Shown: positions 4,077 through 21,050, counted from the stretch's first letter. The stretch: 23,737 nucleotides of DNA from Ginkgo biloba (GCA_024626585.2 JANKJI020000002.1:9108021-9131757); one strand, 5' to 3'. Translations and numbers: made by a program. Notes: generated by a model not told the origin, from the letters alone.

Positions 4077-4612
4077 AGATTTGAGATTACCCACATTGAT
4101 GACCTTATGAATCTCAAGATGAGCTTGTAAGAAACTGGATGTCCTCACTGCTTAAGTACAATTCCCAAGGTAAACTACGAGGCATCTACCTCAAAAGATT
4201 GTTGAACATTTGGAAGAGCAAGCACAAGTGTTGAGTTAGCTTCAAGTAGGTCATTAATCTAAGGAAGTTGATACTAGTTCTTAATTGTGATTTTGTTGAG
4301 AGCTCAATAGTTGATACATAAACACCATTTGCGATCCCTTTTAGAGACTAGAAGAGTAGGAGACACACAAGGAGATGTGTTGGGTTGGATGCGTCTATCT
4401 TCGATTAAGTGAGTGACTTGCCTTTGTAATTCTTCACTCTTAGACATAGATGTCTTATGAATTGGCTTGGTTGGCAGAGATGAACTTGGAAGAAGTTTAA
4501 TGGAATGCTGGATGGCTTGGCATGGCAGTAGACCCTTGGGTTCTTCAAACACATCACTATAAGAATCAAGAATAACATCCTTTTCCTTGGGGGATTGTAA
4601 TAGTTGAAACAT
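4077..4612 (-). pseudogene. Ty3/gypsy pol pseudogene (RT / RNase H / integrase remnants)
   Basis: SYSDVFEEPKGLLP..AIQHSIKLLPSS..EELQRQVTHLIEDRRIQPNTSPCVSPTLLVSKRDRKWCLCINY*ALNKITIKN*YQLP*INDLL is the RT start. It runs in frame into STLVLALPNVQQSFEVDAS*FTLGIVLKQ*GHPVSY (RNase H start), then in another frame HLEIHKVINVGNLK (integrase C-terminal HxVxNVxxLK motif). Confidence 0.92.
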
Positions 4613-5113
4613 ATTGATTCTAAGCTAATTGTACACAAAGCAATTTGCTTGGTAGTATTAGCAAGTTTAATAGCAGATTCCTTGCAAATTAGATCTTTGC
4701 CTATTCGCCTTGCAAAATATGCCACACATGCAAACACCACCTCCAAGTCTCAGTGTTGTGGTTGATGGAAATTTCATTTTTTGTTTGAGACAAAAATCAC
4801 GAATCCCCTTTAGTTCGATTTTTGGCATGTGTTGTAATGTCATAAAAATGCAATGTCTAGCACGTTTGACATTTTTCTCATTGGAATATGAAGGAGAAAG
4901 TATTCACATAGGTATTTTTTTGTACCAAAATAGTGGTTGAAATATATGTACCTTGAACAAAGATCCTTCAGTGTAGAGGGTGCCAACCCCTTGTTCTTTG
5001 TCTTTTGTCCCTGCAAATATGAAACATGAAGGACTTGGGAAGGGGACGTGATTGGGAGCCTAAAACTACCTTGGATATAAGGATATCAAGAAATGGAGTC
5101 CACAGATCTTGTG

Positions 5114-9930: not shown

Positions 9931-11083
9931 CAATTTGATCCTATTAAATTATGTGTTTATTGATGTGATTCCACATCAATACTCTTCTACAAAACCCAAT
10001 TGCTTAAGGTTGTTAAGATCCACGAAGTAATCTTCCATTTTCTTCATATCAAACACAAAAGGAATTCTGCCTTTTCCAGGTGAGAGTCAAAGTGTTTAGC
10101 CATGCCATCTCCAACCATGTCACACTCTCCCGAACTCGTGAACTCCTCCCATGTTTGAATTTCCAGCCTTTCTTGGTTTTGTATGTTTAAATCTAGTTAA
10201 TGTCATTATTGATTCATAGTCTCTTTGAGATGAAGGATAGTAGTTTGGATTTTCTCTTCATCATCTATTGGATTTAACCTGAAATTCTTGTTGAGCTTTT
10301 GAACCTGTGTCTTGCTCTTGTTCCCTTTTTTCTACCAGTGGAGTTTGGGATTTCCAACTTTGGTTTTTGGTATTGAGTTCCTCTGGGCGTAGTGTTACCC
10401 CTCTGATTCCTTAGTTTGCAGAATTCTCAAGGGAGGAGCATCTCTACATGCTTCTTCCAATCTTTCATATTCTCACCACAGCTGATGTAAATTATTTTGG
10501 TCCTGATTCCCTTCTCTGTCAAAATCCACAGGACCTCTGGCTTCCCTTCATCAATTCCTCCAAGGAACTACCTCATCCTCTGCTATTGGAGGGTTCTCAA
10601 TCCTTTCAACATCAATACGCTCGTTTTCTTACCACTCCCTATTTTTAGGCCGATTAACATTGATTTGCTGAAATAATTGTGCAAGCTCACACAATGCTCT
10701 ACCAACTTGCTTGTAGAGATTCATACACAGGCCTCAAATTTTCCTTTATGATTTCACATACCAAAGTGTCCTGTTTGGAATTTCGCCAGTTTCCCGTACT
10801 GGTTCCTGATAATCAGATCAAAAGTATTCTTTGCTGCCCACAGTGGCAGAACCAAAATCAATTTTAGGACCAGGTGTTACAAATCCACAATGTAAAAAGG
10901 AAGACCTTGATGCATGAAACAAGATCGGAAAAGTGAAACAAATGTGAAGTGCCTTTTCTTTTCAAATCCTTCTTGGATCTTCTAATCTGATTTGTTAGAT
11001 CTACTGGGTTTGTTGGTACAACACACAATAGCTCTCTTTTTGTCTAACGACCTTAATATATACAGCTACCTAAATATTATTTA

Positions 11084-11209
11084 TCAAACTTGATTGTTGA
11101 ACACTCCACTGCAAAGGTAGAATATTGGTTTCATTGAGCAAAGAAGGTTTAAAACGTATTTCTCAAACTTGATTGTTGAACACTGCATTGCAAAGGTAGA
11201 ATTTTGGTT
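11084..11209. repeat. 79-bp-period direct repeat in LTR-element leader
   Basis: tcaaacttgattgttgaacact(c/g)ca(c/t)tgcaaaggtagaat(a/t)ttggtt at 11084 and 11163; the second copy runs into a 100-N gap. Confidence 0.9.
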
Positions 11210-12825: not shown

Positions 12826-13219
12826 TGATCTCATAGATACAGGATGAAGGTAATGACATGCCAGTTGAGGACTTGATGATGTATGTTAAGGGAGTACTCA
12901 CTACATGGAATGTTTAGAATGGGATTCACCATGATATCATGCAGGTAGTGGAATGCAGAATTACGAGGAGAAGATTTGCACTGAACAAATATTATATGAA
13001 TAGGATCTGAAAGAAAAATCTTTATATCCACACATGAGTCTAGTATGATCCCACATATACTGGATGCATATTGGAAAAATCAATTGAAGATTTGGTGGAA
13101 GAAGTTAAAGGAATGCTCACTACATTTAGATTGGGATTTGTCTTGATATCATGCGGGTAGCAGAATGCGTGGTCAGAGGGCAAACAGATATTGGTTGGAT
13201 TGTTTCTGATAGAAAAATC
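12826..13219 (+). repeat. Diverged tandem duplication, 220-bp period
   Basis: Copies at 12826-13020 and 13046-13219 share 'ctcactacat', 'gggatt', 'tgatatcatgc(a/g)ggtag', 'gaatgc' and 'tctga(a/t)agaaaaatc'. Confidence 0.85.
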
Positions 13220-13692: not shown

Positions 13693-13746
13693 GAGCTCAN
13701 NNNNNNNNNNNNNNNNNNNNNNNNNNNNNNNNNNNNNNNNNNNNNN
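13693..13746 (+). CDS. TRIM37: TRIM37-like E3 ligase, coiled-coil exon A (only first 7 nt visible; 3' end estimated inside N gap)
   Basis: Pyrimidine-rich acceptor 'cgcttcttgttttccatggcag' then GAG CTC A.. (E-L-x) before N-run 13700-13794. In TRIM37 as I recall it, the 18 residues before AKDE begin 'ELISLVQEV...', predicting a 54-nt phase-0 exon. The end coordinate is inferred, not seen. Confidence 0.6.
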
Positions 13747-13869
13747 NNNNNNNNNNNNNNNNNNNNNNNNNNNNNNNNNNNNNNNNNNNNNNNNCTGAAG
13801 GATAATGCTAGAGTTAAACACCAGTTGTATGAGCAATATTTTTTTTTCCTATTTTTTTGTGACTGGCAG

Positions 13870-13920
13870 GCTAAGGATGAGAGCTTGGCAGAACTGGAGA
13901 TGGCATATGAACGTATGCGG
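13870..13920 (+). CDS. TRIM37: TRIM37-like E3 ligase, coiled-coil exon B (AKDESLAELEMAYERMR)
   Basis: Acceptor 'tttttttgtgactggcag|G', donor 'CGG|gtacat', 51 nt, phase 0/0, open. Resembles recalled human TRIM37 AKDERVREIRNAVEMMI. Confidence 0.85.
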
Positions 13921-14323
13921 GTACATTTGTGGCATATTTCCTATTTCATTTTCTTTTTTTAACCAGGCAGTTCATTACATGCATGAACTCAAATAATTCA
14001 AATAGTGAATTAGTAGTTGTTGTAAGAATTGTTGTCACTAGTTTGGCAATATGTAGTATTGAAGTGGAAAATGTCTTTGGACATTTGATTTTGTGAGCTT
14101 GAGAGTGCAAAAAAATAGTAAACATAGGTGAGAAGTAGGATTACTACAAAATCATTAGGTCTCTACCAAAGACTTCCATGTGTTCCTTTGTTTGTTTTCT
14201 TATTTAGATGAATAGGTATTTGTCACGAAAATCTTCTAATGGTACTCTTATTATTTTGTACTTGTGTTTTCTGATTGTATTTTAGCAGTGATTGTCATTG
14301 AATATGGCATATTAGAATCACAA

Positions 14324-15896
14324 CATTGGAAAAAAGGTGGAATTCACACCCTCAACACCTAGTGCAGGTCATACCTTAACGGAGGAAACCCTATGTACAT
14401 ACACAAATACGGAAATGAAAATGAGGCTTTGAAGGAAGATACCATGTCATTATCGCACTTCTTTGGGCAACCCATCATTTTCTTGTCGCTGCTCTTGTGG
14501 GGCCTCTCAACCATCACTAGCATATAGCACTGCAACTACAAGGGAGAAAGTTTAACTTTCCTAGGAGGGTGGTTTGTGGGGGCACAGTGAGGAGATTTAA
14601 TGTGCGCTGGGTCCTTGCCTGGCTCCTACCTCTTCTTCTTGCTTTGCATTCGTTCTTGGCAACTTCTTTGTTCTTGGCACTTTGTTGACAGTGTAGGGGC
14701 ACTACACCAATGCTCAATCAACTCCATTAAGTGACCCAATTCAACTTGGACCTTCTTGGCTTGTTTACATTCTTTTCCCACCATGTGTCCATGGTGGAGA
14801 GGCCAAACACCTTGTGCCAAGAGATCAATGCATCTATAGACTTTGCTCATGGAGGTGGAGATAGAGGAACACTCGTTTTTTAGTGTCTCGTCTTTTTTGA
14901 GATTAGAGGGAGGTACTATTGCCTTTCAGGGATGCGAGAGTCCCTCCACACACTTATTTCTTGTAAGGACAAATGATGTGTGGCTATCGTTTTTAGAGAG
15001 CTCTTCCTCTGTAGGTGCCACCTTTTGGAGAGCACTACACAACGGCCATACAGAGTCCAACGCATCACCTCTGACCTCAATAGCAAGGCAAAAATGTCTA
15101 GGGCACACACAAAATCTCCAACAAGACATTTGACATTGCCCAAAGTGTCAGACTAGTTGTCGACCTCGTACATAGCCTAGCAAGAGGGAACCCAAACACG
15201 CCATGAGAGAACCTTATAGAATCGAAAGAGTCAGATCTAGATTTGAGAGAGAGAGCCTTATCACTAGTTTCTTTGTACCAGGCAATGGAGCTTCGACCTT
15301 GGACGTTACAAGAGAGACAAACCAAGCTAGGAAGTGGGGCTAATAGACAAGTGANNNNNNNNNNNNNNNNNNNNNNNNNNNNNNNNNNNNNNNNNNNNNN
15401 NNNNNNNNNNNNNNNNNNNNNNNNNNNNNNNNNNNNNNNNNNNNNNNNNNNNNNGCTTCAAAAAAGTCGCATAAGGACCATGGTAGCCTTTGGTTGGGCT
15501 TAGGACATCGTTTGGGTATAAGGTACGACTTCTAAGGTCAACTTTCTGCAACTAGGAAGCATAAATTCGCCCTAGAAGTAAGTCGTGGGCCTTAGCTGGA
15601 AGAACGATGTAGAAAACAAGCCAAGATCATGAGGAAATGACTTCCTTTAATCGCCTTTTATAGTTTACCAAGGGGTGCGACTGCACTTAAGGTTGGCTGG
15701 TAGTGTAGGCTCGCGATCGTTCAAATCCTTTGCATAAAGTGAATTGTCTCTTAGAAAGTGGACGCTAGAATTTAGAGTAGGCTGAGTTAGCATTTTAACT
15801 AATTTTTAGCCCTTCTAAGGGTCCCACCATCATGGTTAGTCACTAATTTGATCACTAACATACTTAACTCTTAGTTAAGCTCTTTTCCAACCCTCT
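14324..15896 (-). mobile_element. Probable long (~1.5 kb) 3' LTR with upstream purine tract
   Basis: On the minus strand: purine tract agagggttggaaaagag (15896-15880), 'TGttagtgatc' start at 15860, and TATAAAA at 15662-15656. The segment is GC-richer and non-coding relative to the flanking intron; the left boundary is approximate. Confidence 0.45.
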
Positions 15897-17536
15897 TTGT
15901 TTGTCGCTATGGACCGTTTATCTTCTAAGGGTTTAATTAATGCTTTTTGTAAGTCAAACTTCTCCTTTGACCAGGCTTTGACCAAGTTTGACTTGCCTTT
16001 GATTAGGGTTGATTGGGCTGTAAAACAAACACTTATCCCAAAGGCATCACAAGCAAGTGATTTATTCTTTCATCTTCTCAACATAGAAGAGGGCATTTTG
16101 AGCATTAGAACTTGCATCTTATGAAGCCTAGGACCAGTAGCTAGTTCTTGGTGTATGATAGATTGAAAATTAAACTCTCTTGAGTCTTGATGAACCTCCT
16201 ATGTTAGAGTTAGGGGGAGTTGGTCGTGCTTTATTTAGTTTGATATCACGTCATTCCCTTTTATCAAGAGGGTAAAAGTATTTTCAATGGAGATATTTAG
16301 AAATGCTTTTTTACAGTTCAAGCCCAATCTTTCCATTGTTATATTTTGCATGTTGCTTTTTTGCAATTGCCTTTTTAATGGTCTCGTTGGAAACATTGAC
16401 ACAATCCATGGCATAATTTACCTTGTATTGTTCCCCAAACAAAGACAAAAGGGAAATGTCCATCAATAAGTTTGTTGGCCATCTTCACTTGGACGTAGGA
16501 TGCCATTCATGTGCCACAATCTAACTTTGTGGGAAATTAAATAGTCTTAGGCATTAGCTGCAAGGATAGAAAGATTAAGGGCAATGGTTCCCATGTTTAA
16601 TGGATCATAAAATCTCCATCTTTTGTCTTCTATCACCATTAGCATTGAGACATTTTGAAGCATCTGCAATTGAACTCTTGACAATTTTGATAAAGAACTC
16701 ACCATACCCAAGACTAGATTACATATCAATAATAAATGGTCATTCAATCCTATCACGAGCTTGATGGCTACAATTGGTCGTATATGGCAATATTGTCAAC
16801 TATACATACATAAATTTTGCCATAATGCATAAATATTGACCAATCAACAGTAACACATTAGTTGGGTAGTTCTCAATGGTTGGATGATTGGCAATATAAC
16901 TGAGGTTGTGCGTTCTATATATCCACTTGATAGCTAGGAATTCAAAGAATAACAACCATTGGTAGTGAGTCTTTATTAATGTTGCTATTCATTACTATTA
17001 TTAATTAATATCAATTAACCATATCGAATGTAATAATTCTATTACATCTTCTCCGTCATTGCTCTCTTAGGCTTTGGTGGTTATGGAATGCATTTTCAGT
17101 ATGTTGAGGGTTGTTTGTTATGTTAAGCTTGGCATTATAATTTTGACATCCTTTCCATTCGACAATGTGTTTCATGATTTGTTTATCTTCCTTTTCATGA
17201 TTTGTTGTGGTATTAAACTAGCTCTGGTTTTGATATACTAGTTCGAAGCAATAAGAAATGTACATTGAGCTTCTTTCGACTTGTGATCTTTGTCCCTTAT
17301 GATATGGAACATGCATTTTTATTTGTTGCTTTTATAAAATGAGGTGCTTTTGGTGCGAAACTATATATTTCTTTGGATTAGTTGAAAATGAGATTAGCAC
17401 TTTAGATATTTTGATTTGATATTTGCTAAACGATATATTATGATATAGTTTAATTCTTTTGGGTGTTTTCTCTTTGATGGAAAATTTGTCAGGGTAATTA
17501 TGTTGGGTTGTTCATGTGCGTGATTTGTAACACTTA

Positions 17537-18415
17537 TGCTNNNNNNNNNNNNNNNNNNNNNNNNNNNNNNNNNNNNNNNNNNNNNNNNNNNNNNNNNNNN
17601 NNNNNNNNNNNNNNNNNNNNNNNNNNNNNNNNNNNNNNNNTAGGAGGAGATTGGCAAGGAAGAACTAGATGGATCGGCCATTGCAAGCATAATAGACACC
17701 CATCTCAAGTCAGTGATGGGGGTGATGAAGCAATGGTCACAAATCCAAATGGAATTGTTAATTGCCTTGCCGAATGCCATCAGGAAGCCTTGAGACCCTA
17801 TCCCTATTCAAGTTTGAAGCTCAACATTGTCTCGGGGCGAGACAAGGTTTTAGCTGTGGGGAAGTGTTGGACAAAGCGAAAGCCTAAGATCAATGACCGA
17901 TGGAACCTGTTACCAAAAACTGACAGAATTTGCCATGACGATCGACGGAACCTGTTCTCGAAGACCGACGGATCTGGTTGTCACCTGACAACTGACATAA
18001 CCTTCTGCTGACAACTGACGGAGCTGCCCTCAGCCGACATCAGCTCACCCACAGACCTAGGGTTAATCTATTGTAATTATGCATTGTAATTCTCTTCGAT
18101 GGTTATCATAACTGTCAAAGATGCGTATAAATAAGAGTTGTCTGAGAGGACCAATTAGTCTGAATTGTATTCTGTACATGTAAGTCTGGAGTATACCTTT
18201 CTTTGTAGATGGATTCGTGATCTGTCATGCTGTATTGTACTATGTCATCGATCTTGTATGTAACCATCATTATCTCTAATAATACAATGATGCGACTATC
18301 TGCGCATGGTAATGATGTATGAATGAATGGATGATATATGTATATAGATGCCATAATAGAGACAGACCAGCGACCAATCCTGCAGGAGTTCGGGATCAAA
18401 CCAAGACGCTTAACA
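17537..18415 (+). mobile_element. LTR retrotransposon with ACTTA target-site duplication; 3' LTR 17865-18415; 5' part lost in gap
   Basis: PPT-like 'tggggaag', then TGTTGG...CTTAACA (551 bp, TGTT/AACA inverted ends) with TATAAATA at 18126. ACTTA follows at 18416-18420 and also occurs at 17532-17536, immediately before 'TGct' and the 100-N gap. Confidence 0.8.
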
Positions 18416-18688
18416 ACTTACTTGAAGTTATTCAGAATTCTTTGTAGATCGTTTAGAGTCCACGACAGACTCTGAAATATGTCCTAAATTGATCAGTGAT
18501 TAAAATGATTATGCATAGGATACTAATTTTACTGATAATTTCCAGAGGATACATAAGAAATTTCATAAGTATCATATGATTTTTCCCCTCATAGAGAATG
18601 TGAACTTGGTTCTTGTCTTTCCATACTTTTGTTGCCCTGTGTTCTAGAATACACAATATTCCCTATTCTCTAAGTCACTCTCTATGTA

Positions 18689-18704
18689 CTCTCTCTCTCT
18701 CTCT
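18689..18704. repeat. (CT)8 microsatellite
   Basis: ctctctctctctctct read directly. Confidence 0.85.
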
Positions 18705-19382
18705 TTCCCTCTAATCTATGTGTATTATCCTTCCAATTATTTCTTCCTCCTACTTTTTTACTTGAGTGTCATTTTATTTCCATAACGACTTAAAGAAGAT
18801 GACCCATCTTGTAACTAAACTTTTAGTTTTGGTATGTAGAATCTACATTTTTATCTCAGTGAGTTACTCCTTTTTTTTTCCTCCTTATCAGAGTTAAAAA
18901 TCCTTTGTTCANNNNNNNNNNNNNNNNNNNNNNNNNNNNNNNNNNNNNNNNNNNNNNNNNNNNNNNNNNNNNNNNNNNNNNNNNNNNNNNNNNNNNNNNN
19001 NNNNNNNNNNNAGGATAATGCATTTGCATAAGAGGCCAAAAATTCCAAGTCTAGTACAAGAGGGTGCTGGTATAAGGCATAGAGGACCGGTTTGTGTGCA
19101 ACATTTTTTATGTGGGGTGGTATGGAGTGGAGAAAATAGAAAGGGAAATAGCATAAATTTGCAGACTGGGTACTACTAGAACATGCATTTGTCATGTGTG
19201 GTTCTTAGAATTTTTGGTAGTTTTCTTTCATTAAAGTTTATTCGTTCTTCTTGCTTTCTGTACTATTTTCAAGCTAATAGAGCAGTCTGGTTAGGCATGG
19301 AGTATTTATGAAAAGGTATGAGAAAAATTCCAAAAGATGAAAGAGAGTTTGAATAAGAACTTCAGTGGATTTAAACATGCAG

Positions 19383-19454
19383 ATGAGGCTTGAGGAACAA
19401 CTGAAATGCAAACTTCTAGCGTTGTTAGGTCAAAAGGGTTCAATGACACAAGAG
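19383..19454 (+). CDS. TRIM37: TRIM37-like E3 ligase, exon C (MRLEEQLKCKLLALLGQKGSMTQE)
   Basis: Acceptor 'catgcag|ATG', donor 'GAG|gtatgg', 72 nt, phase 0/0. Resembles recalled TRIM37 [24 protein letters not shown]. Confidence 0.9.
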
Positions 19455-19551
19455 GTATGGTATCATTGCTTTCTTCTTTCTTGAAAAGGAATCATATGAA
19501 TTGGAATTTCATGTTGCATGATAGACTTAAGATTTTGTGTGGCAATTGCAG

Positions 19552-19656
19552 ATGGAGCTTGTTGAAACAGTCCTCCATGAACTGGATAATCAGTTGAACA
19601 GAATCCCTAAAAGTGATCTTATTGCTCAAGAACCAATGATGTGTCGCATGCTTCAG
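19552..19656 (+). CDS. TRIM37: TRIM37-like E3 ligase, exon D (MELVETVLHELDNQLNRIPKSDLIAQEPMMCRMLQ)
   Basis: Preceded by a 97-nt GT-AG intron (19455-19551). Acceptor 'aattgcag|ATG', donor 'CAG|gtctat', 105 nt, phase 0/0. Resembles recalled TRIM37 [35 protein letters not shown]. Confidence 0.9.
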
Positions 19657-20021: not shown

Positions 20022-21050
20022 TTTTTTTTTTTTTTTAAAACCAGAATGAAGAGGAAATTTATATTAGTACTAAAATGATATTACAAAAGTGGCAGTTGCC
20101 AATAAAACAGCTTATGATCTTTGCAAAATCATGTTGTCAGATCCCTCTGTTTACTCCTCTCCTTTGATATTGACTGTGGTAACATCTACATTCAACATAC
20201 ACTGAAGACTACTACATTGATTTTGCTATTACATTAATAAATTCTGTGGACACACTGGTCTCATTCAATTCAGTCTTCCACTTATTTCAACAAATCTGGG
20301 GCTGAGTGGAGATTGCCATAAGATGTGGAACCCACCATATGCTGACTATTATCTGAGGAGATGGTGGAGACCAAAGCAGGTACTTTATCTTTCNNNNNNN
20401 NNNNNNNNNNNNNNNNNNNNNNNNNNNNNNNNNNNNNTCGAGAACGCAAGACATCATTGAGGACTTCATTTCTAGCTCTTCGGGGAAAGCAGTCTTAAGG
20501 CTGGTATTAATTATTTCTTTTGCAAAATATGCAAGCATCTGAACAATCTTCCTCCACAAATTCGTAACTTCTTTGTGCAGATCCATTTGAGGAAGAGTGT
20601 CCTCAGTTTATCCTATTACTTCATTTCCAATGAGAGGTTTTTTCCTTATTGCTATATTATTAAGATCATATAGCATAAGGATCTTTTTTATCACCACTTG
20701 GAACAAAACTTTGGTATCTTAAAGAAAGGTTTCCGGATCTTTTCTCATTGAAGCAAATAATTTCTCTGTGATTTGAACTAATGACACCAGATTCTTATTC
20801 ATTTCTTTACTTCTACAAATGTCTTCCCTATAATCTAGTGTTCAATATGAAGTATCATAATTCTATTTATTATGATTTGGATCGTTTGTGTTTGAAATTT
20901 CCTTTTGATATGAATAGTTAATGTGATACTGCCTGGATCAGTGTGAATGTTTTCTGTTTTAAACTCTTCTGGTTGTGCAAATGCTGTGCTGCATCCTATT
21001 GATAAATTGGCAAAAATCAAAGAATAGAAATTTGCTGCTATATTTCAAGA
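20022..21050 (-). mobile_element. Possible 5'-truncated LINE 3' end
   Basis: A T-run at ~20022-20036 would be the poly(A) tail on the minus strand. An upstream decayed frame contains 'KIKYLLWSPPS', like the W.PP motif before plant L1 RNase H. The far boundary is a guess. Confidence 0.35.

What the first reader, a model, noticed from the sequence alone, without database searches (positions are those of the whole stretch)
13693..19656. Hidden TRIM37-like E3 ligase gene in a plant genome
Seen: three complete phase-0 GT-AG exons splice into a stop-free 76-aa peptide, AKDESLAELEMAYERMR|MRLEEQLKCKLLALLGQKGSMTQE|MELVETVLHELDNQLNRIPKSDLIAQEPMMCRMLQ, and a fourth upstream exon starts E-L. Against the human TRIM37 coiled-coil as I recall it, the alignment is gap-free with about 36/76 identities (hand count from memory). 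Known: TRIM37 is a RING-B-box-coiled-coil-MATH ligase that limits centrosome/centriolar assemblies in animals (PLK4, CEP192, centrobin) and ubiquitinates PEX5. It is regarded as the ancient TRIM lineage, and I do not know it from model angiosperms. Inference: an intact copy in a gymnosperm-like genome could track flagellated sperm and de novo centriole (blepharoplast) formation, as in Ginkgo or cycads. If the host is a centriole-less conifer, it would instead point to a non-centriolar plant role.
Basis: partly seen in the sequence, partly recalled or inferred. Interest (0 to 1): 0.8.

Follow-up and report, generated by a model that had tools for sequence, protein, structure and literature searches.

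The report
Gymnosperm TRIM37 ligase, coiled-coil exons
These are real exons of a seed-plant (probably Ginkgo) counterpart of the animal ubiquitin ligase TRIM37; such genes were already known from mosses and a spikemoss, and close relatives appear to be expressed in pine-family trees that lack centrioles, so the gene is probably not just a relic of swimming sperm.

Summary
Three stop-free, phase-0 AG/GT exons (13870-13920, 19383-19454, 19552-19656) map without gaps, and abutting each other, onto the coiled coil of TRIM37-type proteins. Summed identity is 60-62/76 to gymnosperm-type transcripts, 55-62/76 to mosses and 37/76 to bird TRIM37. A Sphagnum gene has the same exon sizes and phases. The flagged gaps touch only exon A and intron B-C. 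Pairwise dN/dS is about 0.15-0.18.

RING, B-box and MATH exons are not in the window. They are present in the nearest full-length relatives, with the key residues kept.

Plant TRIM37 is not new (Marin 2012; RefSeq moss and Selaginella).

The flagellated-sperm link is doubtful. The nearest intact, expressed relatives form a clade I infer to be Pinaceae (about 80%, host not confirmed), which lack centrioles. Verdict: new member of a known kind, moderate interest.

The parts
13693..13699 (+). Visible 5' end of exon A (codons for E-L after an AG acceptor); the homologous exon is 54 nt and starts E-L
   Evidence: the Sphagnum exon (L009:9200-9253) and the gymnosperm-type transcripts start this 18-aa block with E-L
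13700..13794 (.). Assembly gap hiding most of exon A (and possibly its donor)
13795..13800 (+). Possible 3' end of exon A (codons for L-K, as in plant homologues), followed by GA instead of GT; unresolved: non-canonical donor, contig-edge error or chance
   Evidence: hexamers coding L-K are 0.5% of positions
13870..13920 (+). Exon B, 17 aa, coiled coil
13921..19382 (+). Intron B-C, about 5.5 kb by estimate, three gaps, includes an LTR-like end at 17865-18415
19383..19454 (+). Exon C, 24 aa, coiled coil
19455..19551 (+). Intron C-D, 97 nt, GT-AG
19552..19656 (+). Exon D, 35 aa, end of the coiled coil and the following helix

Best explanation
The four exons encode the coiled coil of an intact, vertically inherited TRIM37 (TRIM subfamily A) gene in a gymnosperm, probably Ginkgo; the RING, B-box and MATH exons lie beyond the window or in gaps. 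Shown: exon identity, conserved intron positions, purifying selection, and the full domain set in the nearest relatives. Inferred from human TRIM37 (bioRxiv 10.1101/2024.10.09.617493 and .617407): the coiled coil forms an antiparallel dimer with RING/B-box at the ends and two MATH domains at the centre; MATH binds short peptide motifs weakly, so only clustered substrates are bound avidly, activate the RING and get ubiquitinated. In plants it most likely acts this way as a broadly expressed remover of aberrant protein clusters. Candidate targets are microtubule-organising scaffolds or PEX5 (my speculation). The job is probably not confined to sperm, though it may include the blepharoplast in Ginkgo.
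For:: nearest full-length relative P0001 has RING, B-box and MATH; its best PDB match is the human TRIM37 RING (E 1.7e-26); 40% identity to bird TRIM37 over 469 aligned positions; same exon lengths (54/51/72/105 nt) and phases in Sphagnum; dN/dS 0.15-0.18; 7 residues shared with the gymnosperm-type clade against mosses, only 3 window-specific changes. C18, C109, G322 and W373 equivalents kept in the land-plant relatives; exons A-D fall on the long helices of the model (125-224, 227-251); an intact, expressed clade with a Pinaceae-like divergence pattern, also present in two JGI assemblies; one Physcomitrium copy is seen on 55 contigs, suggesting broad expression.
Against: No RING, B-box or MATH exon in the window. 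The host of the window and the hosts of the related transcripts are inferred, not confirmed. B-box W120, needed for higher-order assembly in human, is L in land plants, so the clustering step may differ. No plant substrate was tested.
Confidence: 0.6

Rival explanations
1. One reading: the gene is intact but kept because of flagellated sperm; its plant job is to limit blepharoplast or basal-body assemblies, and it belongs to the ciliary gene set.
For: Confirmed plant hosts (Physcomitrium, Ceratodon, Sphagnum, Selaginella, Mesostigma) all belong to flagellate lineages; no angiosperm hit appeared; Ginkgo keeps flagellar genes (PMC9023351); human substrates are centriolar or centrosomal.
Against: The nearest relatives form a clade that fits Pinaceae and are intact, with core dN/dS 0.2-0.35 between genera-level groups. 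The protein searches are incomplete (they missed full-length Sphagnum), so the angiosperm blank is weak. From my own knowledge, land plants lack PLK4, CEP192 and centrobin.
Confidence: 0.22
2. The window holds a partial duplicate or a recently dead copy of the gene, not the working locus.
For: Only coiled-coil exons are seen; possible GA donor after exon A; no exactly matching transcript found; scan notes report decayed copies of flagellar genes in this genome (s1-596106, unchecked).
Against: All six splice sites of B-D are canonical, there are no stops, dN/dS is about 0.16 and there are few lineage-specific changes. Multi-kb introns and 16 gaps easily explain the missing exons.
Confidence: 0.14
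3. A chance coiled-coil resemblance, an unrelated family, or animal contamination.
For: Exon D alone gave no PDB match; exon B alone is only marginal against bird TRIM37.
Against: 81-82% amino-acid identity to plant TRIM37-type proteins against 49% to bird, abutting placement, and intron positions shared with moss.
Confidence: 0.01

Closest known systems
TRIM subfamily A / class VIII (TRIM37-like; Marin 2012, PMC3503706)
   Same: Coiled coil aligns without gaps; nearest full-length relatives have RING, one B-box, coiled coil and MATH; the paper already reports members in 'a few fungi and plants' with patchy losses.
   Different: I could not read which plants its figure lists, and found no paper naming a seed-plant member. 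The domains outside the coiled coil are not visible at this locus.
Moss and lycophyte TRIM37-like proteins (Physcomitrium XP_024373646, XP_024391968, XP_024371078; Ceratodon KAG0579097; Selaginella XP_024521060; Sphagnum contig L009)
   Same: 55-62/76 identity (Selaginella 44/76); same exon lengths and phases in Sphagnum.
   Different: Introns are 180-270 nt in Sphagnum against about 5.5 kb for B-C here; Physcomitrium has three loci; none has been studied functionally, as far as I found.
Gymnosperm-type transcript clade P0001/P0026/P0027/P0028 (Logan and JGI; inferred Pinaceae)
   Same: 60-62/76 identity; exon D about 90-92% identical in DNA; 7 shared derived residues.
   Different: The window is outside the clade (dS 0.62-0.72 against at most 0.22 within it). 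The clade has C at the Y375 position next to the peptide-binding W373; the state in the window's gene is unknown.
Vertebrate TRIM37 (human: PLK4, CEP192, centrobin control; Mulibrey nanism)
   Same: 37/76 to bird TRIM37 without gaps; C18, C109, G322 and W373 conserved in the land-plant relatives.
   Different: W120 is L in land plants; plant relatives have a long N-terminal extension (about 175 aa in P0001); the animal centriolar substrates are not known from land plants (own knowledge).

Membership tests
TRIM subfamily A (TRIM37) | Coiled coil homologous to TRIM37 | tested here: met
TRIM subfamily A (TRIM37) | N-terminal RING domain | tested here: inconclusive
   Not in the window; present in nearest relatives
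TRIM subfamily A (TRIM37) | Single B-box | tested here: inconclusive
   Not in the window; present in nearest relatives
TRIM subfamily A (TRIM37) | MATH/TRAF domain after the coiled coil, with the W373-type peptide site | tested here: inconclusive
   Not in the window; present with W373 in nearest relatives
TRIM subfamily A (TRIM37) | Nearest full-length relatives are closest to TRIM37 among characterised TRIMs | tested here: met
   PDB: TRIM37 E 1.7e-26 against TRIM3 2.3e-11; all named hits are TRIM37-type or unnamed; Atlas top clusters are TRIM37
Land-plant TRIM37 orthogroup | Shared intron positions and phases with another land plant | tested here: met
   Sphagnum L009 exons 54/51/72/105 nt, phase 0
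Working gene (against pseudogene) | Spliced transcript of this locus | not testable with these tools
Working gene (against pseudogene) | Purifying selection and intact splice sites | tested here: met
   (76 codons only)
Ciliary / flagellated-sperm gene set | Absent from lineages without flagella (conifers, Gnetales, angiosperms) | tested here: inconclusive
   A probably-Pinaceae clade keeps it, but hosts are not confirmed; leaning not met
TRIM subfamily A (TRIM37) | E3 ligase activity and cluster-dependent activation | not testable with these tools
   Needs biochemistry

The most novel reading that the evidence does not exclude
TRIM37 survives intact and expressed in both flagellated (Ginkgo) and centriole-less (Pinaceae) gymnosperms, with a changed peptide-binding groove (Y375 to C) in the latter. 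Its conserved job would then not depend on centrioles, and the loss of centrioles in conifers may have shifted its substrates, giving a natural comparison for the ancestral role of the oldest TRIM ligase.
Probability: 0.45. Interest if true: 0.6.

Novelty: new member of a known kind. Interest (0 to 1): 0.4.

Why it matters
TRIM37 is a human disease gene and the oldest TRIM lineage, and its ancestral role (centrosomal, peroxisomal or general cluster clearance) is open. A seed-plant copy extends its range in plants, where a 2023 MATH-family survey still states that it is absent (PMC10218331). If conifers without centrioles keep it under selection, the centriole cannot be its only purpose. Physcomitrium, with three loci, makes this testable by knock-out. 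The Ginkgo exons alone are an annotation-level result.

Tried and rejected
2. The joined spliced peptide was never built or searched.
3. Search for RING, B-box, exon E and MATH exons in all six frames of the window: nothing above background. By-eye look-alikes near 20140 and 20290 scored as noise.
4. Exon D against PDB sequences: no hit.
5. Identifying the hosts of the related runs through papers and supplements failed.
6. A fragment-length homologue search found no transcript identical to the window; the metagenome scan gave only distant (39-43%) members.
7. No TRIM37 occurrence in the 30 top papers on Ginkgo, Cycas, Marchantia or gymnosperms, and no paper held TRIM37, centriole, evolution and land plants together. 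The library is incomplete.
8. Pfam scans of other ORFs in the window found nothing significant.
9. P0009 (stick insect) is a spurious hit with no matched stretch.

Full report
OBSERVATION. Each has an AG acceptor and a GT donor, is phase 0 and has no stop or N. Exon A begins at 13693 with codons for E-L and then enters a 95-N gap. The other three flagged gaps are inside intron B-C, so they do not bear on frame. They do mean that B is linked to C and D only by scaffolding, strand and colinearity.

IDENTITY. Exon D alone found P0001, a 915-aa protein from a transcript contig, at E 4.4e-12 and 94% identity. P0001 has RING, B-box and MATH domains. Its best PDB match is the human TRIM37 RING and it is 40% identical to bird TRIM37 over 469 aligned positions. 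Placed independently and without gaps, exons B, C and D fall on abutting stretches of P0001 (341-357, 358-381, 382-416), of all plant homologues and of bird and coral TRIM37. Summed identities are 60-62/76 for the nearest transcripts, 55-62/76 for mosses, 44/76 for Selaginella and 37/76 for bird. No shuffle out of 200 reached the observed score for any exon, B only narrowly. In an AlphaFold model of P0001 175-610 (mean pLDDT 71.7), exons A-D correspond to residues 149-242, on the long helices that form the TRIM coiled coil.

GENE STRUCTURE AND SELECTION. A Sphagnum metagenome contig (L009; sample listed in PMC9584203) carries the whole gene with exons of 54, 51, 72 and 105 nt at the same positions and phase. 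This is independent support for the splice model and for vertical descent. Against the nearest transcripts dS is 0.62-0.72 and dN 0.10-0.12, so dN/dS is 0.15-0.18, on 76 codons only. The window shares 7 residues with that clade against mosses and has 3 changes of its own, against 6 in the clade (difference not significant, p 0.51). RING, B-box and MATH exons are not in the window. With a 5.5-kb intron and 16 gaps this absence is uninformative.

EXON A. Plant homologues end this exon with L-K. The six bases just after the gap code L-K and are followed by GATAAT, not GT. One reading: the true gap is 41 nt and the donor is a rare GA site (such sites are discussed in PMC7072748) or a contig-edge error, leaving a 69-nt intron that is in frame and stop-free. 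The other: the rest of the exon and a normal donor lie in the gap (intron about 123 nt) and L-K is chance. I cannot decide between them.

HOST. Notes from this scan call the genome Ginkgo; these are leads. My own evidence shows only that the window is sister to, and outside, a seed-plant-like transcript clade, which is compatible with Ginkgo.

THE NEAREST RELATIVES AND THE SPERM HYPOTHESIS. P0001, P0026, P0027 and P0028 form one well-supported clade. All have full open frames, with core dN/dS 0.2-0.35 between the four groups. I infer they are Pinaceae, at about 80%, for three reasons. First, they split two plus two (dS 0.10 and 0.13 within pairs, 0.17-0.22 between), as abietoid and pinoid genera would. 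Second, the largest cluster (27 sequences) has three tiers, at least 99%, 96-98% and 92% identity, as subsections, sections and subgenera of Pinus would. Third, the P0027 cluster also occurs as spliced transcripts in two JGI assemblies, one of which I recall as a temperate forest-soil metatranscriptome, where cycads are not expected; that recollection is unverified. Zamiaceae cannot be excluded. Conifers have non-flagellated sperm and lost many flagellar genes (PMC9023351), so if the inference holds, TRIM37 does not track flagella.

MECHANISM. Human TRIM37 is predicted to be an antiparallel coiled-coil dimer; its TRAF/MATH domain binds short motifs through W373 with low affinity, and substrate oligomerisation activates it. 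In the land-plant relatives the C18, C109, G322 and W373 equivalents are kept, W120 is L, and Y375 is C only in the putative Pinaceae clade. I therefore expect the plant protein to be an active RING ligase that reads clustered peptide motifs, with substrates that differ from the animal ones, since land plants lack PLK4, CEP192 and centrobin (own knowledge). Microtubule-organising scaffolds and PEX5 are plausible but untested. I put an intact gene with a role not confined to sperm at 0.6, a sperm-tied role at 0.22, a partial or dead copy at 0.14 and chance at 0.01.

NOVELTY. TRIM37-like genes in plants were reported in 2012 (PMC3503706), and NCBI names moss and Selaginella proteins accordingly, although a 2023 survey says the family is absent from green plants (PMC10218331). 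I found no paper on a gymnosperm copy and no earlier scan note on TRIM37. This is a new member of a known kind. The interest lies in the likely retention in centriole-less conifers, which one metadata look-up would settle.

Noticed in passing
window 13795-13869: Codons for L-K directly after the gap, then GATAAT and a 69-nt stop-free in-frame stretch to the exon B acceptor: possible GA-AG intron, edge error or chance.
   Followed up: partly
window 17865-18415: LTR-like segment (TGTT...AACA, 551 nt) preceded by a purine tract, inside intron B-C; no second copy in the window, no Pfam hit in the adjoining ORF.
   Followed up: partly
window 4307-4624 (-): ORF fragment that by eye resembles the start of a Ty3/gypsy reverse transcriptase; no Pfam hit.
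   Followed up: partly
P0001, P0026, P0027, P0028 (MATH domain): C replaces the otherwise invariant Y375 next to the peptide-binding W373; possible change of substrate preference in this clade.
   Followed up: partly
P0001, P0029, P0032, P0034 (B-box): Human W120, needed for higher-order assembly, is L in all land-plant members aligned and F in Mesostigma and Ancoracysta.
   Followed up: no
L009:9758-9829: The Sphagnum exon C uses a GC donor where the window has GT.
   Followed up: no
P0031, P0032, P0033; P0029, P0030: Physcomitrium has three TRIM37-like loci and Ceratodon two, although a MATH-family survey (PMC10218331) reports none in moss.
   Followed up: partly
window 11071-11209 and 12913-13168: Two short direct repeat pairs (60 nt at 88%, 44 nt at 82%) upstream of exon A; probably repeat debris or gap-edge duplication.
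   Followed up: no
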